Source: Mobula hypostoma (Eukaryota). From it: a stretch of 64,000 bases of DNA. The notes beneath the pieces were generated by a model. It searched no databases, was not told the DNA's origin, and saw nothing but the letters and a program-made list of their open reading frames with translations. Of the stretch, positions 1 through 64,000 are shown piece by piece. The translations under genes were made by a program, and so were the position numbers. The stretch is from assembly GCF_963921235.1 (NCBI RefSeq), contig NC_086101.1, forward strand, positions 31,868,001-31,932,000. Direction: 5' to 3'. Within the stretch, counting starts at the first letter, position 1. Each line of letters starts with the position of its first letter.

Positions 1-388
1 ATACCGAAGAACATCTTTTTAAGGTGATTGCAGAAAGTGTCGGGGCGATGTCAGAGGGGAGCATGGAACACTGCTGTGGTCGTGATGGAGACTGGCACAT
101 TAAGGACAGTTCAGAGACTCTTAGTTAGTCACATGGATGAAAGAAAAATGGACAATTTGTGAGAGGGATGTGTTAGATTGACCGTGGACTGGTCTAAGAG
201 GTCAGCACAATTTTGTGGGCCAAAGGGCCAGTACTGTGCTATACCGTCCTGCTCCATGACCCTACAGAGAGAGGCCAAGACAACACGGATACTGTTATAA
301 TGGGAGAAGGAAACGTGGTGGGGAATGGTGGGGTGAAGATGGGTGACATTGGACGCCCATGTACCGCACAACCAGTGGTGTTTCTTAC

Positions 389-652
389 CGAGGAACAGGA
401 CGAGGGGCTCGGGGAGACCCCGGTGTTCCACCCGACAGGAGAACTTTGCTGTGTCCGTGGGCTCCACCCGCACCGTCCTGGTCAGCTGGTAGGTGTTGTC
501 GTGGTTGGGGAGGATCCCATGGAAATGGATCTCCTCCAGGATCCGGCCGTCCCGCAGAATAGTCACGTCGATGTACTGAGGGTAGAATCCAGTGGCCACA
601 CAGGAGAGCTGGCGGCCATCCTCGGAGGCGGTGAACGAGACTTCAGGGGGAT
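389..652 (-). CDS. MHC class I alpha3 (Ig-C1) exon, cassette B1
   Basis: 264 bp exon bounded by cag| and |GTAAG, phase 1-1. Encodes PPEVSFTASEDGRQLSCVATGFYP...KFSCRVEHRGLPEPLVLFL with both Ig-C1 cysteines. Confidence 0.95.
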
Positions 653-874
653 CTGGGGTGGGAGAGAAAGAGGAAGCATTGAGTGGAGGTAGGAAGGGGA
701 TGGGAAGAGGAGACTGCGTGGGGGGTGTTGCAGAGGAGGTGGCGGGGCTGGTGAAGGTGGGAAGGGGTGGGCAGAGGAGGCGGCAAGGGGTGGGCAGGGG
801 AGGGTGGAGATGGGGGTTGCAGACACTGACTTCCACTCCCTGGCACACACATTGACCCCACCCCACGCACTCAC

Positions 875-1147
875 TGGGTTCAAGGTGACTCCCCCCGGCC
901 TTGACATATTTCATCAGCCATTCGATGCAGGTGTGCTCCAGGTATCCCTTCCAACCCTGGTTCATGGCTGTGTCCCGGTCCCACTTGTTCTTAGTGATGA
1001 TACCCCAGGGCACAGGGGTCACCCACACCATCCGGTCCTTGTCGAAGAGGATGAAGTCTGACCCATCCCAGCCGTACTGCAGGAACCCGGCAGTGGTCCC
1101 GTCGTCACGGAGCTCACAGCCGGACATCCTCTGGAGAAAGTGGATCC
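875..1147 (-). CDS. MHC class I alpha2 exon, cassette B1
   Basis: 273 bp exon, ttccag|GG...A|GTGAGT. Encodes IHFLQRMSGCEL...WDGSDF...TKNKWD...YLEHTCIEWLMKY with C101/C164, T143, K146, W147, Y159 and Y171. Confidence 0.95.
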
Positions 1148-1639
1148 CTGGAACACATCATCCATTGGCGAGTTGTGGGGCTGTGGAAAACTTTCCATCC
1201 TGCAGATGTGGCTTTTGTTTCCACTCCCCCAGGCAGAACCAATATACACCCCACACGTTCCCCCACCGTTCACAATCCCCACTGTCACCGCTGAACAGAC
1301 CCCACCGTCACTTCTTCACCGCAACCCACCATTGACCCATCCCTACCATCACCTTCCATGTCACCCCTCACCTCCAACACGGTCCCCACCCACATCCTAC
1401 CATCACTCTCTCTCCCCACCACTGCATCTGACTCCTGCCCCGTCTCTACCATCACCCCAGCCCTCCCCACCCTGTATGATCTCTACTATCAGCCCCAAGA
1501 CAAAACCTACCATCAACCGTCACCCCCACACAATCACCATTGTCACCCCCGCCAGCCCCACAATACCTAACATCACCCCTGCCACCCCTTGCAAAATCAC
1601 TGACGACACCCACACCTACCCTCCCGCAGCCCCCTGTGC

Positions 1640-2180
1640 ATCCCCATGATCGTTAACGGCACCCCTGCACAACCACATGATCCCTAACGTCACCCCTGTA
1701 CACCCCCATGCTCACTGTCACCCCTGTACATCCCCATGATCCCTAACATCTCCCTTACCATCCCCAACAATCCCCAACACCCCGTCACCACAATTTCTAA
1801 TGTCATCCCTGCCATCCCTCCCACATACCCTAACATCACCCCTGCACCCCACAATCGCTAATGTTGCCCCTGCTAACAACCACCATCCCTCACTTCACAG
1901 TCCACAATCCCTAATGTCACCTCTACCACCCCCCCATGATCTCTAACGTCACCCCTGCTGTCCCCCACAATCCCCAACAACACCCCTCCAACCCCAAGAT
2001 CCCTAACATCACCCCTGCCATACCCAACAAAGCCCAACAACACCCCTGCCACCCAATCCCTAATGCCATCCCTGCCACCTTTCCCACGTGCCCTAACGTC
2101 ACTCCTGCCACCCCACAATCCCTAATGTCACCCCGGCTAACACCCACCATCCCTCACTTCACAGCCCACAATCGCTAATG
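1640..2180. repeat. C-rich degenerate minisatellite in intron 2 of cassette B1
   Basis: Recurrent ~27-28 bp motif of the type CCCCACAATCCCTAA(T/C)GTCACCCCTGC. Boundaries approximate. Confidence 0.75.
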
Positions 2181-2410
2181 TCACAGCCGGCACCCCCACC
2201 TCAGTCCATTGCATGACCCCCACCCCAATCACTACCATCATCTCCACCACCCCACAAACCCCACCGTCACCTTCCACACCCCTCCCCACCCCACCATCTC
2301 TACCATCAGCCCCCCCAACCACCGAAACCGTGCCTGCCATCACCCACCTAATCCCCACAACTGTGTGTTCCCCTCTGCCACCCCTCCCCGCAGCATGGTT
2401 CCCCACTCAC

Positions 2411-2671
2411 CACTCGTCTGGTTGGTCCGGTACATGAGGGTCTGGATTTCGGCCTGGGCCCACTGCTCATCGCCCTGAGAGATCCTTGTCTCCCGTTCCC
2501 AGTAGTCAGGTCCCTGAGTCTCCGCCATCCACTGCTGACGGGGAACCGACCGTCTCAACACACTGTCGTAGTAACTGATCAACAACTCATCCACATACCT
2601 GACGGTAATGAACTCAGGGACCCCCGACCCCGGGGTCACCGCCGTGGAGAAATAACGGAGAGAGTGAAAGC
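2411..2671 (-). CDS. MHC class I alpha1 exon, cassette B1
   Basis: 261 bp exon, ttccag|GC...G|GTGAGT. Encodes FHSLRYFSTAVTPGSGVPEFITVRYVD...GPDYWERET...YRTNQTS with Y7, Y59, R84 and the N86 sequon. Confidence 0.95.
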
Positions 2672-3678
2672 CTGGAACTGGATCTGAGAGTCAGAGAATA
2701 ACTTATATCTGAAACCAGGACCCTGAGGCCCAAGATGCCGGGCTTCACCCCCAACCCCCTGAGAGAATCAGAGTCCTAAAACCAGAGAATCAGGACTGTC
2801 CCCTCACCCCAAGGGGCATTTCAGCTGCACCTGAAGACAGTGAGAGTCCAAATCCCTGATCACATCTGCAGATCCCTGGCTGAGTTGCCTATATCCATGA
2901 GCTGTGGTGTCCCAACCCGGTGATGGAGCGGGGTTATGAAACAAGACACGTTCACCCGGACCAGACTGGGTTCAATCATCAGTGTGTCTCTCTGAGCTCA
3001 GGGTAAGTTGCTCTGTGAGGATAGGGATGTGCTCAGTGCAGGTGGGAAAACTCCCAATCGGGGTGAGGACTCGTACGTGCTCCCTCCCTGGTTTAGTTTC
3101 TCCCTGCTGTCAGTGGAGAGACCAGCTGAGAACTGAGGTCAGGCCGAAGGAACTAATTCCATACAGTCTGGCCCGCTGACTCTTGCACTGGGGGAAAGTA
3201 GAGCACAAAGTTACAGTTAGTCTATGAGATGATAAGAGGCACAGATAATGTGGACAACCAGCTTTTGCCTTAACCAGGAAGCAACGCCTAATACCGAAGA
3301 ACATCTTTTTAAGGTGATTGCAGAAAGTGTCGGGGCGATGTCAGAGGGGAGCATGGAACACTGCTGTGGTCGTGATGGAGACTGGCACATTAAGGACAGT
3401 TCAGAGACTCTTAGTTAGTCACATGGATGAAAGAAAAATGGACAATTTGTGAGAGGGATGTGTTAGATTGACCGTGGACTGGTCTAAGAGGTCAGCACAA
3501 TTTTGTGGGCCAAAGGGCCAGTACTGTGCTATACCGTCCTGCTCCATGACCCTACAGAGAGAGGCCAAGACAACACGGATACTGTTATAATGGGAGAAGG
3601 AAACGTGGTGGGGAATGGTGGGGTGAAGATGGGTGACATTGGACGCCCATGTACCGCACAACCAGTGGTGTTTCTTAC

Positions 3679-3942
3679 CGAGGAACAGGACGAGGGGCTC
3701 GGGGAGACCCCGGTGTTCCACCCGACAGGAGAACTTTGCTGTGTCCGTGGGCTCCACCCGCACCGTCCTGGTCAGCTGGTAGGTGTTGTCGTGGTTGGGG
3801 AGGATCCCATGGAAATGGATCTCCTCCAGGATCCGGCCGTCCCGCAGAATAGTCACGTCGATGTACTGAGGGTAGAATCCAGTAGCCACACAGGAGAGCT
3901 GGCGGCCGTCCTCGGAGGCGGTGAACGAGACTTCAGGGGGAT
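3679..3942 (-). CDS. MHC class I alpha3 exon, cassette B2
   Basis: 264 bp, intact splice sites; protein identical to the B1 alpha3. Confidence 0.95.
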
Positions 3943-4164
3943 CTGGGGTGGGAGAGAAAGAGGAAGCATTGAGTGGAGGTAGGAAGGGGATGGGAAGAGG
4001 AGAGTGCGTGGGGGGTGTTGCAGAGGAGGTGGCGGGGCTGGTGAAGGTGGGAAGGGGTGGGCAGAGGAGGCGGCAAGGGGTGGGCAGGGGAGGGTGGAGA
4101 TGGGGGTTGCAGACACTGACTTCCACTCCCTGGCACACACATTGACCCCACCCCATGCACTCAC

Positions 4165-4437
4165 TGGGTTTCAGGTGACTCCCCCCGGTCTTGACGTATT
4201 TCATCAGCCATTCGATGCAGGTGTGCTCCAGGTATCCCTTCCAACCCTGGTTCATGGCCGTGTCCCGGTCCCACTTGTTCTTAGTGATGATACCCCAGGG
4301 CACAGGGGTCACCCACACCATCCGGTCCTTGTGGAAGTGGATGAAGTCTGACCCGTCCCAGCCGTACTGCAGGAACCCGGCAGTGGTCCCGTCATTACGG
4401 AGCTCACAGCCGGACATCCTCTGGAGAAAGTGGATCC
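4165..4437 (-). CDS. MHC class I alpha2 exon, cassette B2
   Basis: 273 bp, intact splice sites, open frame; 5 aa differences from B1. Confidence 0.95.
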
Positions 4438-5089
4438 CTGGAACACATCATCCATTGGCGAGTTGTGGGGCTGTGGACAACTTTCCATCCTGCAGATGTG
4501 GCTTTTACTTCCACTCCCCCAGGCAGAATCAATATTCACCCCACACGTTCCCCCACCGTTCACAATCCCTACTGTCACCGCTGAACAGACCCCACCGTCA
4601 CTTCTTCACCGCAACCCACCATTCACCCATCCCTACCATCACCTTCCATGTCACAATGCACACCCTACCATAACTCTCTCTCCCCACCACTGCATCCGAC
4701 TCCTGCCCAGCCTCTACCATCACCCCACCCTTCCCCACCCTGTACGATCCCCACCTTCAGTCCCAAGACAAAACCTACCATCACATCCGTCTCTAAAATC
4801 CCCGTCACCCCACACAATCCCTGCCATCCCACCACCACAAATCCTTATGTCACGCCCACCAGCCCTACAATTCCCACCACACCCCACCCCATATGGTCCC
4901 TAACGTCACTCCCTCCCCCCTCACACCCGCACTCTCCCCCATCACCTCCCACCCCCCTGCATATTCCCTATCATCACTCCCTTACTCAAATATTCTTTAT
5001 TGTCAACCCCCTACCCCCACACTGGCCCTACTCTCACCCCCACACCCGCTCAAAACTTACCATCAACTGTCAGTCCCGCCAGCCCCACA

Positions 5090-6000
5090 ATCCCTAACAT
5101 CACCCCTGCCACCCCTTGCAAAATCACTGACGACACCCCCACCATCCCTCCAGCACTCTCTAACATCCCCCTGCACATTCCCATGATCACTAACGTTACC
5201 CCCGTACACCCCCATGATCACTAACATCACCCCTGTAGATTCCCATGCTCCCTAACGTCACCCCTGCACACCCATGATCACTAACGTCACCCCGTACATC
5301 CCTTTGATCACTAAGGTTACCCCTGTACACCTCCATGATCAATAACGTCACCCCTGTACACCCCCATGATCACTAACGTCACCCCTGTACATCCCCATGA
5401 TCACTGACGTCACCCCTGCACATCCCCATAATCACTAACATCACCCCGTACATCCCTTTGATTACTAAGGTCACCCCTGCCACCCCTCCTACATGTCCTA
5501 TCGTCACCACTACAACCCCACAATCCCTAATGTCACCCCTGTACACCCCCATAATCCCTAACGTCTTCCCTGTCATCCCCAACAATCCCCAACACCCCGC
5601 CACCACACTCTAATGTCATCCCTGCCATCCCTCCCACATACCCTAACATTGCACCCCACAATCCCTAATGTCACCCTGCTAACACCCACCATCCCTCACT
5701 TCACAGTCCACAGTCCCTAACGTCACCTCTACCACCCCCATGATCCCTAATGTCACCCTGCTATCACCCACAATCCCCAACAACACCCCTCTAACCCCAA
5801 GATCCCTAACATCACCCCTGCCATACCCAACAACGCCCACAACACCCCTACCACCCAACCCCTAAAGCCATCCCTGCCACCTTTCCCACGTGCCCTAACG
5901 TGATCCCTGCCACCCCACAATCCCTAATGTCACCCCTGCTAACACCCACCATCCCTCACTTCACAGCCCACAACCGCTAATGTCACAGCCGGCACCCCCA
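5090..6000. repeat. Expanded C-rich minisatellite in intron 2 of cassette B2
   Basis: Repeated GATCACTAACGTCACCCCTGTACA(C/T)CCCCAT-type units. Intron is 1773 bp versus 1263 bp in B1. Confidence 0.8.
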
Positions 6001-6210
6001 CCTCAGTCCATTACATGACCCCCACCCAATCACTACCATCACCTCCACCACCCCACAAACCCCACCGTCACCTTCCACACCCCTCCCCACCCCACTATCT
6101 CTACCATCAGCCCCTCCAACCACAACACCATGCCTGCCATCACCCCCCTAATCCCCACAACTGTGTGTTCCCCTCTGCCACCTCTCCCCGCAGCATGGTT
6201 CCCCACTCAC

Positions 6211-6471
6211 CACTCGTCTGGTTGGTCCGGTTCATGAGGGTCTGGATTTTGGCCTGGGCCCACTGCTCATCGCCCTGAGAGATCCTTGTCTCCCGTTCCC
6301 AGTAGTCAGGTCCCTGAGTCTCCGCCATCCACTGCTGACGGGGAACCGTCCGTCTCAACTCACTGTCGTAGTAACTGATCAACAACTCATCCACATACCT
6401 GACGGTAATGAACTCAGGGACCCCCGACCCCGGGGTCACCGCCGTGGAGAAATAACGGAGAGAGTGAAAGC
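6211..6471 (-). CDS. MHC class I alpha1 exon, cassette B2
   Basis: 261 bp, intact splice sites, open frame; 4 aa differences from B1. Confidence 0.95.
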
Positions 6472-7324
6472 CTGGAACCGGAGCAGAGAGTCAGAGAATA
6501 ACTTATACCTGAAAGCAGGACCCTGACTCCAAGATGCTGGGCTTCACCCCCAATCCCCTGAGAGAATCAGAGTCCTAAAACCAGAGAATCAGGACTGCCC
6601 CCTCACCCCAAGGGGCATTTCAGCTGCACCTGAAGACAGTGAGAGTCCAAATCCCTGATCACATCTGCAGATCCCTGGCTGAGCTGCCTATATCCATGAG
6701 CTGTGGTGTCCCAACCCGGTGATGGAGCGGGGTTATGAAACAAGACACGTTCACCCGGACCAGACTGGGTTCAATCATCTGTGTGTCTCTCTGAGGTCAG
6801 GGTAAGTGGCTCTGTGAGGATAGGGATGTGCTCAGTGCAGGTGGGAAAACTCCCAATCGGGGTGAGGACTTGTACGTGCTCCCTCCCTGGTTTAGTTTCT
6901 CCCTGCTGTCAGTGGAGAGACCAGCTGAGAACTTGCACCAAGTTCCCCACCAGTAGCAGCACTCTTCCAGCTCCTATAGAGTGCTTCTCACTTCACCTCT
7001 GACCCACAGTGATTCCTGGGTACTGAGAGGTATTCCTGGGATTACTGACAGGATGTCCAGAGGGTGGGGCTATTACACCTCCCACAAGAGGGTGACCTCT
7101 GTCCCATGTGCCGCTGTCTCTGGAAAACCACATTGAAAGCAGAGACAGGATCTAACTGTACGACACACTCTCCATTGATGGACAGGATGTCGCTCAGTCA
7201 ACAGAACCAGAGGCAACAGTGGGACAGGAGGAATTTGTGGGATCACTGGTGGAGGAAAGGAATAGGAAGGGTAGGAAAAGAAGGTGCGGCCATTCTATTA
7301 GATAACATTTAGCCTTTAGTGAAG

Positions 7325-16697: not shown

Positions 16698-16749
16698 CTG
16701 CGGAGACCCCTCCACACAGGAGGGCCAGCAGTAGTAGACGCAACACCAT
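16698..16749 (-). CDS. MHC class I signal-peptide (leader) exon, probable exon 1 of gene B
   Basis: ATG...GCA G|GTGAGT, 52 bp, phase 1, encoding MVLRLLLLALLCGGVSA. In frame with alpha1 at 6471 (G+GC = Gly). Confidence 0.85.
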
Positions 16750-17148: not shown

Positions 17149-17200
17149 ATGAAGCTACTTCTACTACTGTTTGCCCTCCTCTGTGGATGGGTCTCCACAG
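17149..17200 (+). CDS. Second MHC class I-type leader exon (orphan in this window)
   Basis: ATG...ACA G|GTGAGT, 52 bp, phase 1, encoding MKLLLLLFALLCGWVST. Clearly paralogous to the minus-strand leader, including GGAGGA just before the ATG. Confidence 0.8.
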
Positions 17201-17689
17201 GTGAGTGAAGACACTGAAGGAGATAGATAAGCTGGTAAATAAATTCGGCGCGAGAAGCATCCGTGGAAGAACAGAGATGGTCAGTGCCGTGGGATTGAGA
17301 GTGCAGAGGGGGGGAAGCCAGTCCAGAGAGGTGAACCAAGGGGCGAGACAGGGGATGGTAGGTGTTGGGTGGAACCAGGTGAGGGCCCAGCGAATGGACC
17401 GATGGAGTTCAGAGACAGACTCTGGTAGAACCAGAGGGGAGGGGTGATGAGCAGATGGATCCAGATGGCAGAGGAGATGGGGAGGGTAGGCCAAGGAAGG
17501 AGAATCTCAAGTAAATAGATGTATTTAAACCCTTTTTTTTTACTGAAGAGGCATAGGCATCTCTGATCACGGTGCGGTCGTGGTGTAGGAGGTTGGGGTA
17601 ACAAGTGGAATAGAGGGGCTGGGGGAGTGAACAAGGATAGAGAGAATACCAGAAATGGGAAGGGAAACACAGAGGGTACCGCTAACTGA

Positions 17690-21209: not shown

Positions 21210-22560
21210 AAAGAAAGTCTCTTTATTTCAAAGTTATCATTTTTTTACATTTCTGTGATTTGGATGAAGGGTTCTTCTTGTTTTTATTTTTGTTCTTGAC
21301 ATTGTGTGTTTCAGAATACTGGACACCAACCTCCTTTGAGCACTGCAAGCAGTCCAGCCTTCACCTCTCTTTGAATGAAAGGTTGGGAGGAGGTTCTTCA
21401 TCCTTGATTCATCTTGAGATTTTCTTTTTCTTCTTCTCCCACCATTTTCAGTAGATTCCTGTGTTTGATCAGATGTCTTTTGACTTGTTTGGGTGAGTAA
21501 TTTTGTGGTAAGCCCCTTAGGAATCCTTATAGCTGAGAATCTCTCTGCTTTGGCTTTATCCAAGAACTTTTTGTATTTCTCAATCTTTTCATCCAAATCC
21601 CGTAGTGTCTGTTTTGGCTTGTCCACACACTGGTGATTATTCTCCTGAAGTTTACTTCGTTCAGCACCAGTTGATTCTTTCCCATCACTATCTTCATTAC
21701 CTTGCTCTTCCTCTTCATCCAAAATGTCGTCTTCATCTTAAGAAATGTTCGCAGGTAGAAGGTCCGTCTCAGAAAATTCAGGCGCCACGTTGATTTCCCC
21801 AAAGTTTTGCCTTGCGTATGCAACTATTTGTAGTACTATTGGATTTTCAGCTTTTTCATGTTCTTCAACAATTGCTGTTTCTGATAACCCTTTCACATGA
21901 TCAGATTTGTTTGGGTCTTTTTCCACTTTTAACATAGTTAATGGCTGAGAGTCACCTTCAGCATCTGGTGGTTTAACATAAAAAGGTATTCGCCCTCTTT
22001 GCCAATCATTCAAAACCATTTTGGCCACAGTTTGTATGTCAGATTCTCCACCCTTCAAAAGCTTTCCTGTTCTGAATGCAAGCTTCTCTAAGAAATCAAC
22101 TGGATTGTTTCAAACGTTTCTGTATCCAGAATATGTACTTCTGAATTATAAGGTGTGATTCGGTCATTCAGAAGAGACATCAGAAGCTGGGTTTGTTTAA
22201 GAATTACCCTATAAGGGTCTTTCATAACACTGCCCATCTTTTGGAATTGCTGCAGAGATGACTGCTTTATGACTTGAGTGTTAGCAAGCCAGCTGATGTT
22301 TGGTTCCACTCGAGATGTGGTGCCAGATGTAACTGTTGACTGGAACTGCAGTGACTTGACAATCATCCCATGTTTGTTTCTTCGTTCCTTCTGGCTGTAC
22401 CTATTCAGACGTTAAATAGTTGCCCTATCCCTCTTGAGGCCTCCCCCATCTTTGGGCCAATCTGGGTTGGTGCGGGCGGTGGATGGGTTGGCTGAGCTGC
22501 GGCCCTGGTACTGAGCCTTCACCATCTTCGACACCCTGGGACGGGAACCGAGTCCCGCAT
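21210..22560 (-). pseudogene. GNL2: Processed pseudogene of nucleolar GTPase GNL2 (Nog2), internally deleted
   Basis: ATG at 22525 gives MVKAQYQGRSS.NPS..TNPD...RDRATI*RL.; also [67 protein letters not shown] and DEKIEKYKKFLDKAKA. No introns, with stops and frameshifts; AATAAA at 21227-21222. Confidence 0.92.
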
Positions 22561-44786: not shown

Positions 44787-47700
44787 TGTTGCAATGTACG
44801 TGGCTGGAGCGGACCCAAGTGCAGGACACAGGCATGGAGACGGACTTGGACATGACTTGGACTTGGAGCCTGGACTTGGACTAGACTGGAGCTCAGAGCC
44901 TAGGCTTGGACTGGAACTGGAACACAGAGCCTTGACTTGGACTGGAACATGGAGCCTTGACCTGGACTGGGACTCGGAGCTTGACCTGGTCTGGGACTCG
45001 GACTCGACAAAACAAAACAACGACAGACCACTTGCATCCCAGCTAGGAGCAGCGGCAGAACGGCCGGCAACACGCAGGTGAACTGGGAAAATCAGGTTGG
45101 TACTGGACCCCAGGATAGGGAGTTTGTAGAGTGCCTACGGGATGCATTTTTGGAGCAGCTTGTACGAGAGCCGACCAGGGATAAGGCTATTCTGGATTTA
45201 GTGTTGTGCAATGAACAGGATTTGATAAGTGATCTTGAAGTAAACGAGCCATTAGGAGGTAGTGACCATAATATGATAAGTTTTTATCTGCAAGTTGAGA
45301 GGGATAAGGGCAGATCAGAAGTGTCAGTATTGCAGTTGAACAAAGGAGACTATGGAGCCATGAGGGAGGAGCTGGCCAAAGTTGACTGGTCGGATATCCT
45401 AGCAGAAAAGACAGTGGAACAGCAATGGCAGGGATTCTTGGGAATAATGCACAAGGTGCAAAATCAGTTCATCACCCGGAGAAGGAATGATTCAAAGGGG
45501 GGAAAGTGGCCACAGTGGTTGACAAAGGAAGTCAGAGATAGCATAGCATTAAAAAAGAAGTATAACAGAGCTAAGGTGAGTGGGAAGACGGATGATTGGG
45601 AAATTTTTAAGGAGCAACAGAACTTAACTAAAAAGGCAATACGGGGAGAAAAAATGAAGTATGAACGCAAGCTAGCTAGGAATATAAAGGAGAATAGCAA
45701 AAGTGTTTTTTAGGTATGTGAAGAGAAGGAAGATAGTTAAGAACAATGTTGGGCCCTTGAAGAATGAATTGGGAGAAATTGTTATGGGAAACAGAGAAAT
45801 GGCAGATGAATTTAATAAGTACTTTGGATCTGTATTCACTAGGGAAGACACAAGCAATCTCCCAGATGTATGGATGGGCCAAGGACATAGGGTAACAGAG
45901 GTACTGAAACAGATTGACATTAGGAAGGAAACGGTGATGAGTAGACTGATGGGACTGAAGGCTAACAAATCCCCAGGTCCAGATGGTCTGCATCCTAGGG
46001 TACTAAAGGAGGTGGCTCTGGAAATTGCAGATGCATTGGTGATCATTTTCCAATGTTCCTTAGATTCAGGATCAGTTCCTGAGGATTGGTGAATGGCTAA
46101 TGTTATCCCACTTTTTAAGAAAGGAGGGAGGGAGAAAACAGAGAACTATCGCCCTGTTAGCCTAACATCAGTAGTGGGGAAGATGCTAGAGTCCATTATT
46201 AAAGATGAAATAGTGGCATATCTTGATAGCAGTGACAGGATTGGGCCGAGCCAGCATGGATTTACCAAGGGCAAATCATGCTTGACTAATCTATTGGAGT
46301 TTTTCGAGGATGTAACCAGGAAGATAGACGCGGGAGATCCAGTGGATGTGGTGTACCTTGACTTTCAGAAGGCATTTGATAAGGTACCACATAGGAGATT
46401 GGTGGGTAAAATCAGAGCTCATGGCATTGGGGGGAGGATATTGACATGGATAGAAAACTGGTTGGCAGATAGAAAGCAAAGGGTAGCAGTGAATGGGTGT
46501 TTCTCGGAATGGCAGGTGGTGACTAGTGGGGTGCCACAGGGCTCGGTATTGGGACCACAGCTGTTTACGATTTACGTCAATGATTTAAAGGAAGGCATTG
46601 TGAATAACATCAGCAAGTTTGCTGATGATACTAAACTGGGTGGCAGTGTGACATGTGATGAGGATGTTAGGAGAATTCAAGGTGACTTGGATAGGCTGGG
46701 TGAGTGGGCAGAAACTTGGCAGATGGCGTTTAATGTGAATAAGTGTGAGGTTATTCACTTTGGGAGCAAGAACAGGAAGGCAGATTATTATCTGAACAGT
46801 GTGGAGATAGGTAAGGGAGAAATACAAAGAGATCTAGGAGTACTTGTTCATCAGTCTCTGAAGGTGAACGAGCAAGTGCAGCAGGCAGTGAAGAAGGCTA
46901 ATGGAATGTTGGCCTTTATTACGAAGGGAATTGAGTGCAAGATCAAGGAAATCCTTTTGCATTTGTACAGGGCCCTGGTGAGACCACACCTGGAGTATTG
47001 TGTGCAGTTTTGGTCTGCAGGGTTAAGGAAGGACATCCTGGCTGTGGAGGAGGTGCAGCGCAGGTTCACTAGGTTAATTCCTGGGATGTCTGGACTGTCT
47101 TATGCAGAGAGGTTAGAGTGACTGGGCTTGTACACGCTGGAATTAAGGAGATTGAGTGGGGGGGGGGATCTGATTGAGACATATAAGATTATTAAGGGAT
47201 TGGACAAGATAGAGGCAGGAAATATGTTCCAGATGCTGGGAGAGTCCAGTACCAGAGGGCATGCTTTAAGAATAAGGGGTAGGTCATTTAGGACAGAGTT
47301 GAGGAGGAACTTCTTCTCCCAGAGAGTTGTGGAGGTGTGGAACGCGCTGCCTCAGAAGGCAGTGGAGGCCAATTCTCTGGATGCTTTCAAGAAGGAGCTA
47401 GATAGGTATCTTATGGATAGGGGAATCAAGGGTTATGGGGACAAGGCAGGAACCGGGTATTGATAGTAGATGATCAGCCATGATCTCAGAATGGCGGTGC
47501 AGGCTCGAAGGGCTGAATGGTCTACTTCTGCACCTATTGTCTATTGTCTATTAACACTCAGCTGGACACGAGATAACAAAAAACAAACAACGACAGACCA
47601 CTCACATCCCAGCTTGGAGCCAGCAACACTCAGCTGGACACTAGACGACAAAAACAATGACAGTCCATTTGTAACTTGGCTGGAAGAGAGTCCCTTATTC

Positions 47701-50714: not shown

Positions 50715-50761
50715 TCAGGCCATGGCAGAGGAGTTGGGAGAGGATTCTCCTTTGTCAGAAG
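50715..50761 (-). CDS. Class I gene A cytoplasmic exon 2 (to the stop codon)
   Basis: cag|CT TCT GAC...GCC TGA G|GTAGG encoding (T)SDKGESSPNSSAMA*. Confidence 0.85.
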
Positions 50762-51017
50762 CTGTGAATGGAAGGACAGGCAGGGAAACATTTACTACCA
50801 ATGCAGTGCAGACACGGAGAAACAAAGACAGCCACATGCACACAATACACCACTGCACAAACACAGGTATATACAGATAATCACACACACCGACAGAGAC
50901 ACTCACAAGGGTGTCATACACACACACACAGACACTGAACCCCTGTTCTGTTGATGAGACCCAGTGAACATGAACAATGTCACACAACCACCCAACTGTG
51001 ATTTACAGTGAACTTAC

Positions 51018-51044
51018 TTTTGGTGGGATTGTAGCCTTTGTTCC
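51018..51044 (-). CDS. Class I gene A cytoplasmic exon 1
   Basis: 27 bp, catcag|GG...A|GTAAG, encoding (G)NKGYNPTK with the conserved cytoplasmic Tyr. Confidence 0.85.
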
Positions 51045-52247
51045 CTGATGAAAAACAGCCTGCTGTAAAACACAGAGACAGTCTGTGAGAACAGTCCCAC
51101 ATCCCCAGCTTATAACCAGATAGATTCATCTCCTGCCCAGTGAGCTCTGAATTCCAATCAAACAGAACTTGAGGTACAAGTTGTGAAAGGAGACACATCC
51201 AACAGGATCAGTGTGGCCCCAACTCATTGCAAGGCCATGAGACAGAACAAAGCTGGTGTGTGACAGAGTGGTCAGTGGGAGATTTGGAGTGACCATTTAC
51301 CCTAATACTGACCCTGACCCTGGTCAGGTTCACCAGGTATGGATGCACACGGTAATGAAAGGCTCAGGTGGGGCAGGTAGGAGGAACTGATTTCCCGGAG
51401 CAGAGGAGTCCAAGATCAGAATCTGTCAGTGAGGAGCAAGAAACTGGAAGTGACCGGAGGAAGGAATGTTTCACCCAAACCCAGAGGGTGGCTGGAATCG
51501 AACACACTGTCTGCAGGAACGGTGAAGGCAGACTCTCATATCATTGAAGATAGACTGAGGCAGGTAAGTCAGAGAGGGCGAGAAAATAGGATCAGAGTAT
51601 ACAGGTACATGTGATCATTAATGGCATGTCAGGCCGAAGGATCTAATTCCATACAGTCAGACTCGATGACTCATGCACTGGGGAAAGTAGAAAACAAAGT
51701 TTCCATTCATCGATGAGATGATAAGAGGCTTAGATAAAGTGGACAGCCAACCTTTTTTTAACCAGGGAAGTAATGCCTAATACCAAAGAACATCCCTGTA
51801 AGGTGATAGAAGGGAAGTACAGGGGCGCAGATGTCAGAGGGGTGTGTGGAACACTGCTCGGGGTGGTGGTCGAAGCTGACACATTAAGGACGTTTAAGAG
51901 GCTCATGAATGAAAGAAAAATGGGGGGTTTGTGGGAGGGAATGGTTAGATTGACAGTGGAGTAGTTTAAGAGGGCAGCACAACTTTGTGGGCCAGAGGCT
52001 GGTACTGTGCTATACTGTTTTGTGCTCCATGACCCTGCACTTAGAGGCAGTGAGTGGTAGAGACAACATGGATACTGTCATACTGAGAGAAGGAAAAGTG
52101 ACGGGGAATGGGGGGTGAAGACAGGCAGCACTGGATGTGGGTACCCTTGGGTGTAGAAACGCAAGGGTACTGGGATGGGGTTCGCTGAGGAATACACCCT
52201 GCCCAAGCCCCCTTCCCCAGGGGAAGTCCAACTCCCTCCAGTCCTAC

Positions 52248-52349
52248 CTTTCTTTTTGTAGGCAACACCAATAGCGATGACCACCACCAGGATCACCAGG
52301 ACCACAACTATAGCGATGATCCAGATTGGGATGGAGTTGGGCTTCGGAT
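52248..52349 (-). CDS. Class I gene A transmembrane exon
   Basis: 102 bp, tag|AT...G|GTAGG, encoding PKPNSIPIWIIAIVVVLVILVVVIAIGVAYKKK. Confidence 0.92.
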
Positions 52350-52645
52350 CTATTGGTGATTCAGAGAAACAGTCACATCAGTGACAGAGACAGTGTTAAC
52401 CCCGATTCTCCTTCACCAACCCCACCCACACCCTCCCATCCCACCAACCACCCTGTCTCAGAAACACGGATTTCTCCCCCTGTCCTCTCCTGGGCCTGTG
52501 GTCAGCAGTGACCCCTCACTGTGCTCTTGGACCAGAGGTCAACAGTGACCCCTCACCATCACAGCTCCCAGCCCTGGGCCAGTGGTCAGCCAAGCCCCCT
52601 CCCTCTCACTGCCCATGTACCGCCCCACCAGTGAGTGTCTCTTAC

Positions 52646-52909
52646 CCGGGAAGGGCAGGGAGGGCTCGGGGAGACCCCGGTGTTCCACCCGACAGGAGAA
52701 CTTTGCTGTGTCCGTGGGCTCCACCCGCACCGTCCTGGTCAGCTGGTAGGTGTTGTCGTGATTGGGGAGGATCCCGTGGGAATGGATCTCCTCCAGGATC
52801 CGGCCGTCCTGCTGAATAGTCACATCAATGGACTGAGGGTAGAAGCCAGTGGCCACACAGGAGAGGTGGCGGCCGTCCTCAGAGGTGGTGAACGAGACTT
52901 CGGGGGGAT
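52646..52909 (-). CDS. Class I gene A alpha3 exon
   Basis: 264 bp, intact sites, PPEVSFTTSEDGRHLSCVATGFYP...FSCRVEHRGLPEP. Confidence 0.95.
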
Positions 52910-52939
52910 CTGGGGTGGGAGAGAAAGCAGTGAGTGGGG

Positions 52940-54030
52940 GCAGGAAGGGAGGAAGAGGAGATGGTGAAGGGGGTTGTAGGGGAGGGCAAAGGGGGAGAGG
53001 CAATGCAAGGGGGAGGTAACGGCAAGTGGGGAGGGGAATCAGCAGGGGAGGAGAGAGCAAGGGGGTGGAGAGGAAATGATGAGGGGGAGAGGAAACAGGA
53101 AGAGAGGAAGGGAAACCGTGAGGGGGGAAGAGGTTAAAGGCAAGGTGGAGAGGAGATGGCGAGTTGGGAGAGGAAATGGAGAGGGGCAGAGAGGGGACAG
53201 CGAGAAGGGGGAGAGGAGATGGTGGGTGGGGGAGAGGACATGAGGTGGGGTGAGGGGAATCTGCAATGGGGAAAGGGAGATGACGGAGGGAGGAGACGGT
53301 GGGGTGAGGGGAGAGGAGACAGGGATGAGGGGAGGTTGGTGAGTACGGGAGGGGAAATGGCGAGGGGATGAAGAGGAAGCAGTGAGGGGGCAGAGGGGCA
53401 AGGGGGAAAGCAGACAGCGGGGGGAATGGTGAGCAGGCGAGGAGGCAGCAAGGGGGGAGAGGAGACAGTGAGAAGGGGGGAAAGGAGACAGTGAGAAGGG
53501 AAGGGGAGAGGGTGAGGGGGCAGAGAGGAGACTGTGAAAGGGGAGAGGAGGAGGTGCGGGGCAGAGGGCGACGGGGAAGAGCAGACATGCGGGGGGTGAG
53601 GAGTCAGCGAAGGGGTGAAGAGGTGACGGTGAAAGTGGGAGAGGAGGGGGAGGGGGAGAAGGAAAGGGCAATTGGGGAGAGGAGACGGTGAGGGGGGAGA
53701 GGAAAGAGCGAGGAGTGGGAGAGGGAGGGGGTTGAGGGGGCAAGGGGGGAGGGGACAGGGAACACGGAGACGATTGGGGGGCAACCTGATGGGGAGCGAG
53801 GAGATAGAGGTTGAAGACACGGGAGGTGAAGAGACAGGGAAGAAAGGCACAGAGGTGAGGAGGCAAGGGATGAAGAGATGAGGTGAGGAGATTGAGGCGA
53901 GGAAATGAGGATGAATAGACAGAGGCCAAGGGGACGAGGGTGCAAAGAGACAAGGCGTGATCAGATGGGGAGCGTGGAGAGGAAGTGTGAGGGGACGTCA
54001 AAGGGAGGGGCGAGGAGATGGCGATGGGGT
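52940..54030. repeat. Purine-rich (G/A on +) low-complexity tract, intron 3 of gene A
   Basis: Long GGGGAGAGGAGA-type tract; intron is 1172 bp versus 222 bp in the B cassettes. Confidence 0.85.
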
Positions 54031-54081
54031 GGGGGGGGAGCTCTCCCAGACACACATTTCTCCACCACAACCCCCACTCAC

Positions 54082-54354
54082 TGGGTTTCAGGTGACTCTC
54101 CCCGGCCTTGACGTATCTCGTCAGCCATTCGATGCACTCCTGCTCCAGGTATCCCTTCCAATAGTGGTTCCTGGCCGTGTTCCGATCCCACTTGTCCTTG
54201 ATGATCTGACCCCAGGGCACAGGGGTCACCCACACCATCCGGTCCTTGTCGAAGGCGATGAAGTCTAACCCGTCCCAAGCGTACCGATTGAACCCGGTGG
54301 TGGTTCCGTCGTCACGGAGCTCACAGCCGTACATCTGCTGCCAAATGTGGATCC
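54082..54354 (-). CDS. Class I gene A alpha2 exon
   Basis: 273 bp; IHIWQQMYGCEL...YAWDGLDFIAFD...IIKDKWD...YLEQECIEWLTRY. Confidence 0.95.
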
Positions 54355-54439
54355 CTGCAACAAACTGTCTGTCAGGGGGAGGAGGATACAACTTCCCCAT
54401 CCTGTAAATCCTCACAGTCACCCCTACACAATCGTAAAC

Positions 54440-55830
54440 TCACCCCACCCATCAAACATTCCCCACCGTCACCCCCACTCATCCAACATTCCCCACCGTC
54501 ACCCCCCCACCCATTGAACATTCCCCACAGTCAACCCAACACATCGAACATTCCCCACCGTCACCACCCCCCCACCCATCGAACATTCCCCACCGTCATC
54601 CCCCACCCATCAAACATACCCCACCGTCACCCCCACACCCATCGAACATTCCCCACCGTCACTCCCACCCATCGAACATTCCCCACCGTCACCCCCCCAC
54701 CCATCGAACACTCCCCACTGTCACCCCCCAATCAAACATTCCCCACCGTCACCCCCCACCCATCGAACACTCCCCACCGTCACCCCCACCCATCAAACAT
54801 TCCCCACAGTCACCCCCCCACCCATCAAACATACCCCACCGTCATCCGCCCACCCATCGCATATTCCTCACAGTCACCCCCCGCCCATCGAACATTCCCC
54901 ATAGTCACCACCCCCACCCATCAAATATTCCCCACAATCACACCCCCACCCATCGAACATTCCCTACCGTCAACCCCCCCACCCATCGAACATTCCCCAT
55001 CGAACATTCCCCACCGTCACCCCCACCCATTGAACATTCCCCACAGTCACCCCCCACCCATCGAACATTCCCCACAGTCACCCCCACCCATCTAACATTC
55101 CCCAACGTCACCCCCCCACCCATCGAACATTCCCCAGCGTCACCCCCATCGAAAATTCCCCACCGTCACCCCCACCCATCGAACATTTACTACTGTAACC
55201 CCCCACCCATCGAACACTCCCCACCGTCAACCCCCACCCATCAAACATTCCCCACAGTCAACCCCCCCCACCCATGAACATTCCCCACCATCACCCCCCA
55301 TCAAACATTCCCCACCGTCACCCCCGCCCATCGAACATTCCCCACCGTCACCCCCCATCGAACATTCCCCACAGTCACCCCCACCCATCGAACATTCCCC
55401 ACCGTCATCCCCCACCCATCAAACATACCCCACTGTCATCCCCCCACCCATTGAATATTCCCCACCGTCAACCCACCGATCAAACATACCCTACCGTCAC
55501 CCCCACACCCATCGAACATTCCCCACCGTCATTCCCCCACCCATCGAACATTCCCCACTGTCACCCCCCACCCATCGAACATTCCCCACCATCACCCCCA
55601 CCCATCGAACATTCCCCACCGTCACCCCCACCCATCAAATATTCCCCACCGTCACCCCCACCCATCGAATTTTCCCCACCGTCATGCCCCACCCATCGAA
55701 CATTCCCCACTGTCACCCCCCCACCCATCGAACATTCCCCACCGTCACCCCCACCCATCGAACATTTACTACTAACCCCCAACACATCGAACACTCCCCA
55801 CCGTCACCCCCCATCAAACATTCCCCATCA
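54440..55830. repeat. ~27-28 bp minisatellite in intron 2 of gene A
   Basis: Dozens of CCCCCACCCATCGAACATTCCCCACCGTCA units. Confidence 0.92.
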
Positions 55831-56839
55831 TTCCTGGCTGATGTCCACGCACTTGCGCAGTCGTACCCTGATCGAACTGCTGAAGAAATATTGCATGGAC
55901 CCTACCCTCACGCCCACACAGTCCCTACTGTCACCCCCACATGGTCCCCACCATTGCTCCTACACCTACACCTATCAGACAGTTCCTACTGTCACTTCTA
56001 CCACACATCAGACAGTCCGTACACACCAGACCCACCACCCTCACACAATCCCCTCCATGACAATCTTACCACACCACGATCCCTACCATTACCTCCCCAA
56101 CCCATGGTCACAAGTAACCCCCTCCCCCCATCCCTAATATTACCCACCGACCCACACCCATCCCCGCCTCCACACTGCTTCGACTGTCACCTCCCTCCCT
56201 TCCCCCACATGGTGTCAGCGGTGACTCACACCCCACCCCCAGTACAGTCTCCACCACCACCCTCCTATTGCCTGGTCCCTACTATCACCCTGGGACTCCC
56301 ACTCCTGCACAGTTCTCATCATCATTCCCCACCCCACCCCCGTACGGTCCCATCCATCACCCCTTCCCCACCCACACATGGCCCTTCCCCCCACCCCTGC
56401 ATCATCATCCACCACCACATCCCTGGCCCCTACCATCACGCCCACACAATCCCTACCATCGCTCCCCCACCCGCACTGATCACCCACTGTAACACCCTTC
56501 CCCCACCCCCACCCAGTCCCCACCATCACCCCTCATCCGCCCTCACTCACATTCCTTTCCGTCACTCCTTGACCACCTCCACACAGGCCCTACCATCATC
56601 CCCTAGGTCCTCACTTCCGCAGGTCCCTATAGTCACCCCCACCCCCAAAGTCCCTGCTGTCACCCCCTCCCCCCACCCCTGCACAGTCCCGACTATCACC
56701 CCACCATTCCCACCCCCGTAAAATCCCCACAAGCCCCTCCCATCGCCCCTCACCCGAGTGGTCTTTCCGTCACTCCCTAACCCCCACACCCGTGCAGACC
56801 CTGCAGCCACTGCTTCCCCCAACATTGTTCACCACTCAC

Positions 56840-57100
56840 CCCCTGTCTGGTTGGTCTGGCTCATCACGGTCCGGATGTTGGCCTTGGAAACCTGCTCATT
56901 GCCCTGAAAGTGCCGTGTCTCCCGTTCCCAGTAGTCAGGTCCCTGACTCTCCGCCATCCACTGCTGACGGGGAACCGTCCGTCTCAACACACTGTCGTAG
57001 TAAACGATCTGCTCCTCGTCCACGTACCCAAGCACAGTAAACTCAGGGACCCCCGACCCTGGGGTCACTGCCATAGTGAAATAACGGAGAGAGTGAGAGC
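56840..57100 (-). CDS. Class I gene A alpha1 exon
   Basis: 261 bp; SHSLRYFTMAVTPGSGVPEFTVLGYVD...GPDYWERET...MSQTNQTG. Confidence 0.95.
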
Positions 57101-63240: not shown

Positions 63241-64000
63241 CAGTGCATGCAAAAGTTTGGGCACCCCAATCAATATTTATGTTACTGTGAATAGCTAAGT
63301 GAGCAAAAGATGACCTGATTTCCAAAAGGCATGAAGTTAAAGATGACACACTTCTTCAATATTTTAAGCAAGATTACTTTTTTATTTCTGTCTTCTACAG
63401 TTTCAAACTAACAAAAAGGGAAAAGGGCCCGAAGCAAAAGTTTGGGCACTCTGCATGGTCAGTACTTAGTAACACCCCCTTTGGCAAGTATCACAGCTTG
63501 TAAATGCTTTTGTAGCCAGCTAAGAGTCTTTCAATTCTTGTTTGGGGGATTTTCACCCATTCTTCCTTGAAAAAGGTTTCTAGTTCTGTGAGATTCTTGG
63601 GCCGTCTCGCATGCACTGCTCTTTTGAGGTCTATCCACAGATTTTTGATGATGTTTAGGTCGGGGGACTGTGAGGGCCATGGGAAAACCTTCAGCTTGCA
63701 CCTCTTGAGGTAGTCCGTTGTGGATTTTGAGGTGTGTTTAGGATCATTATCCTGTTGTAGAACCATCCTCTTTTCATCTTCAGCTCTTTTACAGACAGTG
63801 TTATGTTTGTTTCCAGAATTTGCTGGTATTTATTTGAATTAATTCTTCCCTCTACCAGTGAAATGTTCCCCATGCCACTAGCTGCAACACAAGCCTAAAG
63901 CATGTTTGATCCACCCCCGTGCTTAACAGTTTGAGAGGTATTCTTTTCATGAAATTCTGCACCCTTTTTTCTCCAAACATACCTTTGCTCATTGCAACCA
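63241..64000 (-). mobile_element. Tc1-family DNA transposon, 3' end (runs off the window)
   Basis: TA|CAGTGCATGCAAAAGTTTGGGCAC terminus; transposase LQQDNDPKHTSKST...WPSQSPDLNII.NLW. Confidence 0.92.

What the first reader, a model, noticed from the sequence alone, without database searches (positions are those of the whole stretch)
331..388. Transmembrane exon cleanly deleted in both B cassettes
Aligned to gene A, B1 follows A's intron 4 only to GCCCATGTAC (A 52611; B1 355, B2 3645). It then resumes in A's intron 5 at about 52136 (GGGTGAAGA..GG..CA.TGGA). About 474 bp of A (52137-52610), including the whole TM exon (52248-52349), is missing. Both cassettes share the junction, so the deletion predates the duplication. 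Read-through of the alpha3 donor (GKKHHWLCG...) gives no hydrophobic span. Inference: either a secreted class I, since alpha3 and the cytoplasmic exons are all phase 1 and could join in frame, or the step that allowed ectodomains to be chained without an internal TM.
Basis: partly seen in the sequence, partly recalled or inferred. Interest (0 to 1): 0.8.

Follow-up and report, generated by a model that had tools for sequence, protein, structure and literature searches.

The report
Ray MHC-I chain lacking membrane anchor
A devil-ray immune gene carries three copies of the peptide-presenting outer part of an MHC class I molecule in a row and has lost the exon for its membrane anchor, so it probably makes a secreted, three-headed version of a protein that normally sits on the cell surface.

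Summary
Compared with the neighbouring class I gene A, both B1 and B2 lack the same 474 bp (A 52137-52610). That stretch holds the whole transmembrane (TM) exon (52248-52349), and the junction is identical in both (B1 354/355, B2 3644/3645).

B1 and B2 are not separate genes. Joined to the leader exon at 16749-16698, their six exons translate exactly to residues 1-553 of NCBI's XP_062904366.1. This is Mobula hypostoma LOC134346730 isoform X1, 838 aa, named only "uncharacterized protein". The model reads signal peptide, three alpha1-alpha2-alpha3 units, then a 15-residue hydrophilic tail, with no TM segment.

The 3.29-kb unit has no leader, TM or cytoplasmic exon. All exons are phase 1-1. A 995-nt intron links one unit's alpha3 to the next unit's alpha1, whose acceptor has moved 12 nt upstream and adds a DPVP linker.

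NCBI predicts similar TM-less chains in M. birostris, Hypanus sabinus and Pristis pectinata. In Pristis the unit boundaries and the linker differ, and the terminal TM exon is inverted rather than deleted.

Soluble class I genes are known. I found no paper describing a tandem-ectodomain chain. Expression and secretion are untested here. First-stage notes of this scan had already flagged the chain on this same window.

The parts
16698..16749 (-). Leader exon of the chain gene (MVLRLLLLALLCGGVSA + G), donor G|GTGAGT
   Evidence: Its translation begins P0055.
6211..6471 (-). Unit 1 (B2) alpha1 exon, 261 nt, phase 1-1
4165..4437 (-). Unit 1 (B2) alpha2 exon, 273 nt
3679..3942 (-). Unit 1 (B2) alpha3 exon, 264 nt, donor TCG|GTAAGA
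3621..3678 (-). B2 copy of the finding. It holds 34 nt of intron 4 and then the deletion junction (3644/3645) joined to intron-5-like sequence.
3135..3137 (-). Joint between tandem units. A-intron-5-like sequence (equivalent to A 51628) abuts A-intron-1-like sequence (equivalent to A 57560), with no homology at the joint.
2411..2683 (-). Unit 2 (B1) alpha1 exon. An acceptor 12 nt upstream of the ancestral one (2671) adds the D-P-V-P linker.
   Evidence: The linker DPVPG is present in P0055.
875..1147 (-). Unit 2 (B1) alpha2 exon
389..652 (-). Unit 2 (B1) alpha3 exon
331..388 (-). The finding itself. It holds the retained 34 nt of intron 4 (388-355) and then the junction 355/354 to intron-5-like sequence. 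The 474 bp of A that include the TM exon are absent.
1..354 (-). Intron-5-like spacer that leads to unit 3, left of the window. It matches A 51780-52136 and is 100% identical to 3291-3644.
52137..52610 (-). The segment of gene A that is missing from B1 and B2. It includes the TM exon at 52248-52349.
50715..57100 (-). Comparator gene A, a conventional TM-anchored class I. Exons: alpha1 57100-56840, alpha2 54354-54082, alpha3 52909-52646, TM 52349-52248, cytoplasmic 51062-51018, last exon 50761-50715. Its leader lies off the window.
   Evidence: It is 90% identical to M. birostris P0008.

Best explanation
B1 and B2 are the first two of three tandem alpha1-alpha2-alpha3 units of a single gene, Mobula hypostoma LOC134346730.

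Inferred history: an ancestral class I gene like neighbour A lost 474 bp containing exon 5 (connecting peptide plus TM). A 3.29-kb segment running from intron 1 to intron 5 was then duplicated in tandem by non-homologous joining.

Shown: every class I exon here is phase 1-1. The alpha3 donor has no TM exon to pair with. The next acceptor is the following unit's alpha1, 995 nt downstream.

From the NCBI model: in the last unit, alpha3 splices to the final cytoplasmic exon.

The mRNA then encodes a signal peptide, three complete class I ectodomains joined by LVLFL-DPVP-G linkers, and a 15-residue hydrophilic tail. There is no TM segment and no hydrophobic C-terminus for a GPI anchor.

Inferred: the product is a secreted heavy chain able to carry up to three beta2-microglobulins and three peptides. 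Untested here: transcription, secretion, beta2m and peptide loading, and function.
For: The deletion and the shared junction are confirmed.

The window's exons chain into residues 1-553 of P0055 without a single mismatch. All acceptors and donors are canonical.

P0055 has three PF00129 and three PF07654 stretches. After the signal peptide its highest 19-residue hydropathy is 0.81, against 3.84 in the TM-bearing P0008.

The unit has no leader, TM or cytoplasmic exon.

Exons differ 2.2% between B1 and B2 with no indels. Introns differ 6.6% with 656 gap columns (Fisher p = 4e-7). dN/dS between B1 and B2 is 0.37 on 16 substitutions, and all nine amino-acid changes fall in alpha1/alpha2.

Every Mobula unit keeps Y7, Y59, R84, T143, K146, W147, Y159, Y171, both cysteine pairs and the N86 sequon (residue list from PMC8236899).

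The internal units have their own acceptor, which gives DPVP. M. birostris shows the same feature as DPVS.

TM-less chains are also predicted in M. birostris (836 aa), Hypanus sabinus (573 aa) and Pristis pectinata (573 aa).

Pristis DNA shows three intact units with canonical phase-1 splice sites. A 30-bp in-frame duplication lengthens the linker in the internal units only.

The gene span of 21.4 kb puts its end about 4.6 kb left of the window. That fits an A-like 3' end shortened by 474 bp.
Against: I saw no transcript or protein data. The chain rests on NCBI Gnomon models whose supporting evidence I could not inspect. Phase-1 symmetric exons make in-frame computational fusions easy. Long class I models elsewhere are plain read-through fusions that keep a TM segment and a second leader (Mustelus, Stegostoma, Scyliorhinus).

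The third unit and the 3' end lie outside the window, and their DNA could not be fetched.

dN/dS between B1 and B2 rests on 16 substitutions, and gene conversion confounds the exon-versus-intron contrast.

AlphaFold2 on a 9-row alignment failed (mean pLDDT 39.6), so there is no structural support for how the chain is arranged.
Confidence: 0.72

Rival explanations
1. B is a decaying array of partial class I duplicates, a pseudogene. The 838-aa protein is an annotation artefact made possible by phase-1 exons.
For: Internal units lack leader, TM and tail exons, as dead fragments would. Annotation pipelines do produce spurious multi-unit class I models. I saw no expression data.
Against: All nine ectodomain exons of the model are open. 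The six in the window have canonical splice sites. Exons are three times less diverged than introns and free of indels. Peptide-anchoring residues and cysteines are kept in every Mobula unit. The same TM-less multi-unit layout is intact in four species of three genera. Linker changes are confined to internal units.
Confidence: 0.12
2. The units are alternative cassettes. Transcripts mostly carry one unit (leader, one alpha1-3 set, tail) and give ordinary-sized secreted class I molecules. The multi-unit forms are minor.
For: Any exon combination is in frame. NCBI lists isoforms that skip single exons (P0007 lacks unit 1 alpha2; M. birostris X2-X5), so exon skipping is plausible.
Against: Every listed isoform still holds two or more units. 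The shifted acceptor and the lengthened linkers of internal units make sense only if alpha3 is spliced to the next alpha1.
Confidence: 0.12
3. The chain is still membrane-bound, through a TM exon downstream of unit 3 (left of the window) that the gene model skips.
For: The left flank could not be read. In Pristis, a TM exon is physically present in the terminal unit.
Against: That Pristis TM exon is inverted relative to the gene. All four species' models end alpha3 directly in the last cytoplasmic exon. The gene length fits an A-like 3' end minus 474 bp. First-stage note s1-143653 reports no intact TM exon there (unchecked).
Confidence: 0.04

Closest known systems
Soluble class I genes that lack a TM region at the gene level: Atlantic salmon Sasa-ULA and Sasa-ZBAb (PMC7853315, PMC2846915), and mouse Q10 with the rat liver/serum homologue (PMC2188359)
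   Same: A class I heavy-chain gene with an intact ectodomain whose TM region is missing or disabled, giving a water-soluble molecule.
   Different: Those genes have a single alpha1-alpha2-alpha3 ectodomain. This one chains three in one reading frame, and the TM loss is repeated in every unit.
Predicted batoid proteins: M. birostris XP_072115023.1 (836 aa), Hypanus sabinus LOC132394446 (573 aa), Pristis pectinata LOC127585898 (573 aa)
   Same: Leader, two or three class I ectodomains, no TM, and the same (A/T)-(S/T)-DKGESS... tail.
   Different: The linkers differ. Mobula has DPV(P/S) from an alpha1 acceptor shift. Pristis has DLPEPIPQ(L/V)H from a 30-bp duplication in alpha3. Hypanus isoform X1 uses a cytoplasmic-exon piece, AGNKGYNPTK. 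The Pristis units end inside intron 4, and its terminal TM exon is inverted, not deleted. Units cluster by species in the tree, so common origin versus convergence is open.
Neighbouring conventional class I gene A (window 50715-57100) and its M. birostris counterpart P0008
   Same: Same exon layout and phases. Flanking introns are 75-88% identical, and alpha3 differs by dN 0.058.
   Different: A keeps its TM and both cytoplasmic exons and has a single ectodomain. A has Q at position 84 and I at 143, where the chain units keep R84 and T143.
Read-through fusion models of adjacent class I genes (Mustelus asterias LOC144497682, Stegostoma LOC125467716, Scyliorhinus LOC119975565)
   Same: Long predicted proteins with two class I ectodomains.
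   Different: They contain a TM segment, a cytoplasmic tail, junk sequence and a second leader between the ectodomains. This marks them as two separate genes merged by the annotation, which is not the case here.

Membership tests
MHC class I heavy chain | alpha1-alpha2 peptide-binding superdomain (Pfam PF00129) | tested here: met
   P0055 scores 479.9 bits over three stretches. B1 and B2 exons are identical to P0055.
MHC class I heavy chain | Membrane-proximal C1-set Ig domain (alpha3, PF07654) | tested here: met
   Three C1-set stretches, 144 bits. The alpha3 of neighbouring gene A, used here as a proxy for B's, has nurse-shark class I 6LUP as its best PDB match, E 6e-21.
MHC class I heavy chain | Conserved disulphide cysteines (alpha2 pair, alpha3 pair) and the N86 glycosylation sequon | tested here: met
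   GCEL / TCIEW, LSCVATG / FSCRVEH and NQT are present in every unit.
MHC class I heavy chain | Type I membrane anchoring by a TM exon after alpha3 | tested here: not met
   The 474-bp deletion removes it in B1 and B2. There is no TM-like exon in 1-7300 and no TM segment in P0055.
Classical (peptide-presenting) class I | Residues that bind peptide termini: Y7, Y59, R/Y84, T143, K146, W147, Y159, Y171 (PMC8236899) | tested here: met
   All are present in the three M. hypostoma units, the M. birostris units and the Pristis units. The Hypanus units have H7.
Classical (peptide-presenting) class I | High allelic polymorphism and broad expression | not testable with these tools
   Only one haplotype was seen and there are no expression data.
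Classical (peptide-presenting) class I | Association with beta2-microglobulin and a bound peptide | not testable with these tools
   This needs biochemistry. The AlphaFold2 model was too poor to use.
Germline-encoded soluble class I (Q10 / Sasa-ULA type) | TM region absent or disabled in the gene while the ectodomain ORF stays intact and in frame with a terminal exon | tested here: met
   The tail ASDKGESSSNSSAMA comes from the alpha3-to-last-exon join.
Germline-encoded soluble class I (Q10 / Sasa-ULA type) | Protein demonstrably secreted into serum or another fluid | not testable with these tools
   No proteomic data were available.

The most novel reading that the evidence does not exclude
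Rays and sawfish make a secreted, multivalent MHC class I: two or three peptide-binding grooves of classical type on one polypeptide.

The architecture may have been reached at least twice by different rearrangements. In Mobula it involved a TM-exon deletion, an intron-1/intron-5 duplication joint and an acceptor-shift linker. In Pristis it involved a TM-exon inversion, a joint inside intron 4 and a 30-bp duplication linker.

Such a molecule would bind TCR/CD8 or NK-type receptors with built-in avidity and act as a soluble immune regulator. All four species that carry it bear live young (my own knowledge), so a role in mother-embryo tolerance is worth asking about. That last idea is pure speculation.
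Probability: 0.45. Interest if true: 0.88.

Novelty: new variant of a known kind. Interest (0 to 1): 0.74.

Why it matters
Class I molecules are textbook single-headed membrane proteins. Soluble forms are known only as single ectodomains, and multivalent forms only as laboratory reagents such as tetramers. A germline-encoded, secreted chain of three grooves that look able to bind peptide would be a natural class I multimer. If it is conserved in batoids, it opens new questions about what soluble peptide-MHC does in the oldest jawed-vertebrate immune systems.

The case also shows how one small deletion, combined with exons that are all phase 1, can turn a membrane receptor gene into a modular secreted array. 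That mechanism is directly testable with RNA-seq and plasma proteomics.

Finally, it flags proteins that databases currently label "uncharacterized" or misname (for example "hereditary hemochromatosis protein homolog") as a coherent family.

Tried and rejected
- **Fetching flanking DNA.** DNA left of the window, and the M. birostris and Hypanus loci, could not be fetched because the sample files are too large. P0007, P0058 and P0066 were not on record.
- **AlphaFold2.** The 838-aa chain on a 9-row alignment gave mean pLDDT 39.6 and pTM 0.21. This is unusable, so I ran no fold search.
- **Leader upstream of alpha1.** I tested whether an ORF just upstream of A's alpha1 (MRSQSWFTGFGILIL...) is the leader. 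I rejected it because the B copies carry GTG and a stop there. The real leader lies 10 kb upstream.
- **Palindrome model.** I asked whether the Mobula deletion could derive from a Pristis-like inverted allele by excision of a palindrome. The inverted-repeat search found only low-complexity G/C-rich arms. The intron-5-side breakpoints do fall within about 5 bp in A coordinates, but I left this as an observation only.
- **Positional orthology.** The tree groups units by species. Old duplication with concerted evolution therefore cannot be told apart from independent duplications.
- **Literature.** Eight searches and four papers read turned up nothing on tandem-ectodomain class I. The library is incomplete, so this is not proof that no such paper exists.

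Full report
**What the window holds**

The window has no N runs. It carries three sets of class I ectodomain exons, all on the minus strand: B1 (389-2683), B2 (3679-6471) and gene A (52646-57100).

A's alpha3 matches nurse-shark class I 6LUP best among solved structures, so the DNA comes from a cartilaginous fish.

Gene A is a complete conventional gene. Its exons are alpha1 57100-56840, alpha2 54354-54082, alpha3 52909-52646, TM 52349-52248, cytoplasmic 51062-51018 and last exon 50761-50715. All junctions are phase 1. The mature protein is 330 aa and 90% identical to M. birostris P0008. Its leader lies beyond the right edge of the window.

**Checking the observation**

BLASTN aligns window 1-339 with A 51780-52121 and 355-739 with A 52611-52985. 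B2 gives the same pattern.

MAFFT shows a single gap in both B copies, covering A 52137-52610. This is 474 bp: 261 bp of intron 4, the 102-bp TM exon and 111 bp of intron 5.

tblastn with a TM-plus-tail query finds those exons only in A. A hydropathy scan of all minus-strand frames in 1-7300 finds only minisatellite translations.

**What B1 and B2 are**

B1 and B2 form a 3290-bp tandem repeat. The unit matches A from 57560 (inside intron 1) to 51628 (inside intron 5), minus the deletion. The units meet at 3135-3137 with no homology at the joint.

A's cytoplasmic exons lie below 51628, so the unit does not contain them. The only leader exons in the window are a head-to-head pair at 16749-16698 (minus strand) and 17149-17201 (plus strand).

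A homologue search found NCBI models of 476-747 aa in rays, with scores that imply several ectodomains per protein. Their longest isoforms were recovered from the clusters.

The concatenation below translates with no mismatch to residues 1-553 of P0055:
- leader 16749-16698
- B2 alpha1, alpha2 and alpha3
- B1 alpha1 starting at 2683
- B1 alpha2 and alpha3

P0055 is XP_062904366.1, Mobula hypostoma LOC134346730 isoform X1, 838 aa. The window is therefore from M. hypostoma, and B2 and B1 are units 1 and 2 of that gene.

The model continues with a third unit and ends ...LVLFL/ASDKGESSSNSSAMA. That is alpha3 joined in frame to the last cytoplasmic exon.

Pfam finds three MHC_I and three C1-set stretches. 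After the signal peptide the highest 19-residue hydropathy is 0.81, against 3.84 for the TM of P0008. The C-terminus is hydrophilic, so a GPI signal is unlikely (inference).

The gene spans 21.4 kb. This puts its end about 4.6 kb left of the window, as expected for an A-like 3' end shortened by 474 bp.

**How it most likely works**

With exon 5 gone, the alpha3 donor (TCG|GTAAGA) has no TM acceptor to pair with. In units 1 and 2 the next acceptor is the alpha1 exon of the following unit, 995 nt away.

All exons are phase 1-1, so the chain stays in frame.

The internal alpha1 exon uses an acceptor 12 nt upstream of the ancestral one (ctctcag|ATCCAGTTCCAG|GC). B1 has this AG, while B2 and A do not. 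It adds D-P-V-P between units. M. birostris units 2 and 3 have DPVS at the same place.

**Signs of constraint**

- Between B1 and B2, exons differ 2.2% with no indels. Introns differ 6.6% with 656 gap columns (p = 4e-7).
- dN/dS is 0.37. All nine amino-acid differences are in alpha1/alpha2 and none are in alpha3.
- Every Mobula unit keeps Y7, Y59, R84, T143, K146, W147, Y159 and Y171, plus the cysteines and the N86 sequon (residue list from PMC8236899). Neighbour A has Q84 and I143 instead.
- Divergence along the unit runs from 0% (first 500 bp) to 11%. This shows ongoing gene conversion and weakens the argument that a shared junction means the deletion came first.
- Deletion-first is still the parsimonious order, because the unit spans both sides of the deletion.

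**Other species**

TM-less multi-unit models with the same tail exist in M. birostris (836 aa, three units), Hypanus sabinus (573 aa, two units) and Pristis pectinata (573 aa). Hypanus isoform X1 uses a cytoplasmic-exon piece, AGNKGYNPTK, as its linker.

Pristis DNA (L001) could be read, with these results:
- It holds three units. All nine ectodomain exons have canonical phase-1 splice sites.
- The alpha3 exons of the two internal units carry a 30-bp in-frame duplication that encodes DLPEPIPQ(L/V)H. The terminal unit lacks it.
- Internal units end inside intron 4, so they never included the TM region.
- The terminal unit holds a TM exon with intact splice signals, but it is inverted relative to the gene (L001 35704-35808).
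- The intron-5-side end of that inversion maps within about 5 bp of the Mobula deletion breakpoint in A coordinates. The sequence there is low-complexity, so I draw no conclusion from this.

In a tree, units group by species, and the Pristis units sit next to a Pristis TM-bearing class I. One old origin with concerted evolution cannot be separated from convergent origins.

**Controls and limits**

Long class I models in sharks (Mustelus, Stegostoma, Scyliorhinus) are ordinary read-through fusions. They carry a TM segment, a tail and a second leader between the ectodomains. This shows what an annotation artefact looks like, and the ray genes do not look like that.

An exhaustive profile search also found multi-unit class I models in teleosts and a lizard. 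In the one locus I read, Merluccius L002, three units lie about 7 kb apart. No convincing TM exon lies between them; the one hydrophobic ORF window, at 17326, does not look like one. I did not evaluate these further.

I saw no transcript or protein evidence, and I could not read the third unit. AlphaFold2 on the shallow alignment failed.

**Comparison with what is known**

Germline soluble class I genes are documented: Sasa-ULA and Sasa-ZBAb in salmon (PMC7853315), and Q10-type molecules in rodents (PMC2188359). The TM loss by itself is therefore a known kind of event.

I found no paper describing a tandem chain of complete ectodomains in eight searches. The proteins are labelled "uncharacterized" in NCBI.

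**Verdict**

This is a new variant of a known kind. It is of high interest to comparative immunology, pending expression data. First-stage notes of this scan (s1-141773, s1-142225) had already flagged the chain on this same window.

Noticed in passing
window 17149-17201 (+): A second class I leader exon (MKLLLLLFALLCGWVST + G, donor GTGAGT) sits head-to-head with the chain gene's leader, about 400 bp away. No class I ectodomain exon follows it on the plus strand anywhere in 17.2-64 kb, so it looks like an orphan leader.
   Followed up: partly
window 1-500 vs 3291-3790: B1 and B2 are 100% identical over the first 500 bp of the unit (spacer, junction, part of alpha3), yet differ by 7-11% in the middle of the unit. 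This looks like a recent gene-conversion tract.
   Followed up: partly
window 1529-2197, 5068-6000, 54409-55827: A large G/T-rich minisatellite fills intron 2 of B1, B2 and A, with different copy numbers. On the plus strand (antisense to these genes) it reads as long proline/histidine-rich ORFs, which are not genes.
   Followed up: no
window 21237-22366 (-): Several intron-less ORFs on the minus strand; the one at 22091-22366 matches the NGP1NT domain of nucleolar GTPase GNL2/NGP1 (E 4e-23), while the two downstream ORFs tested had no Pfam hit. This is probably a processed pseudogene fragment.
   Followed up: partly
window 45078-47121 (+) and 63491-63766 (-): A LINE reverse-transcriptase ORF (RVT_1, E 1.5e-31) and a fragment of a DDE_3 transposase. 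Much of the 17-51 kb stretch between the class I genes consists of repeated elements.
   Followed up: partly
L001 35704-35808 (Pristis pectinata): In the terminal unit of the sawfish chain gene, a TM exon with intact AG/GT signals and an open frame lies inverted relative to the gene. One end of the inversion maps within about 5 bp of the Mobula deletion breakpoint (A about 52133 against 52136/7).
   Followed up: partly
L001 18260-18289 and 24976-25005: A 30-bp in-frame tandem duplication at the end of alpha3 is present only in the two internal Pristis units. It lengthens the inter-unit linker (DLPEPIPQ(L/V)H).
   Followed up: yes
window gene A alpha1/alpha2 (57100-54082): The TM-anchored neighbour A and its M. 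birostris counterpart have Q at position 84 and I at position 143. The secreted chain units keep the classical R84 and T143. By these residues the chain looks more classical than the anchored gene.
   Followed up: partly
P0058, P0061, P0062, P0066, P0067, P0207; L002: Multi-ectodomain class I models without an internal TM also appear in teleosts (Salvelinus namaycush LOC120027542, Merluccius, Lota, Hoplias) and in a lizard (Hemicordylus, with a terminal TM). In the Merluccius locus, three units lie about 7 kb apart with no convincing TM exon between them (one hydrophobic ORF window at L002 17326). These could be real or could be annotation artefacts.
   Followed up: partly
window 1-339 / 3138-3629 / 51628-52121: The intron-5-like spacer contains a repeat-like stretch on the plus strand (...TGGGCCAAAGGGCCAGTACTGTGCTATAC...). 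It also matches elsewhere in the Pristis locus. It borders the duplication joint but shows no homology across it.
   Followed up: no
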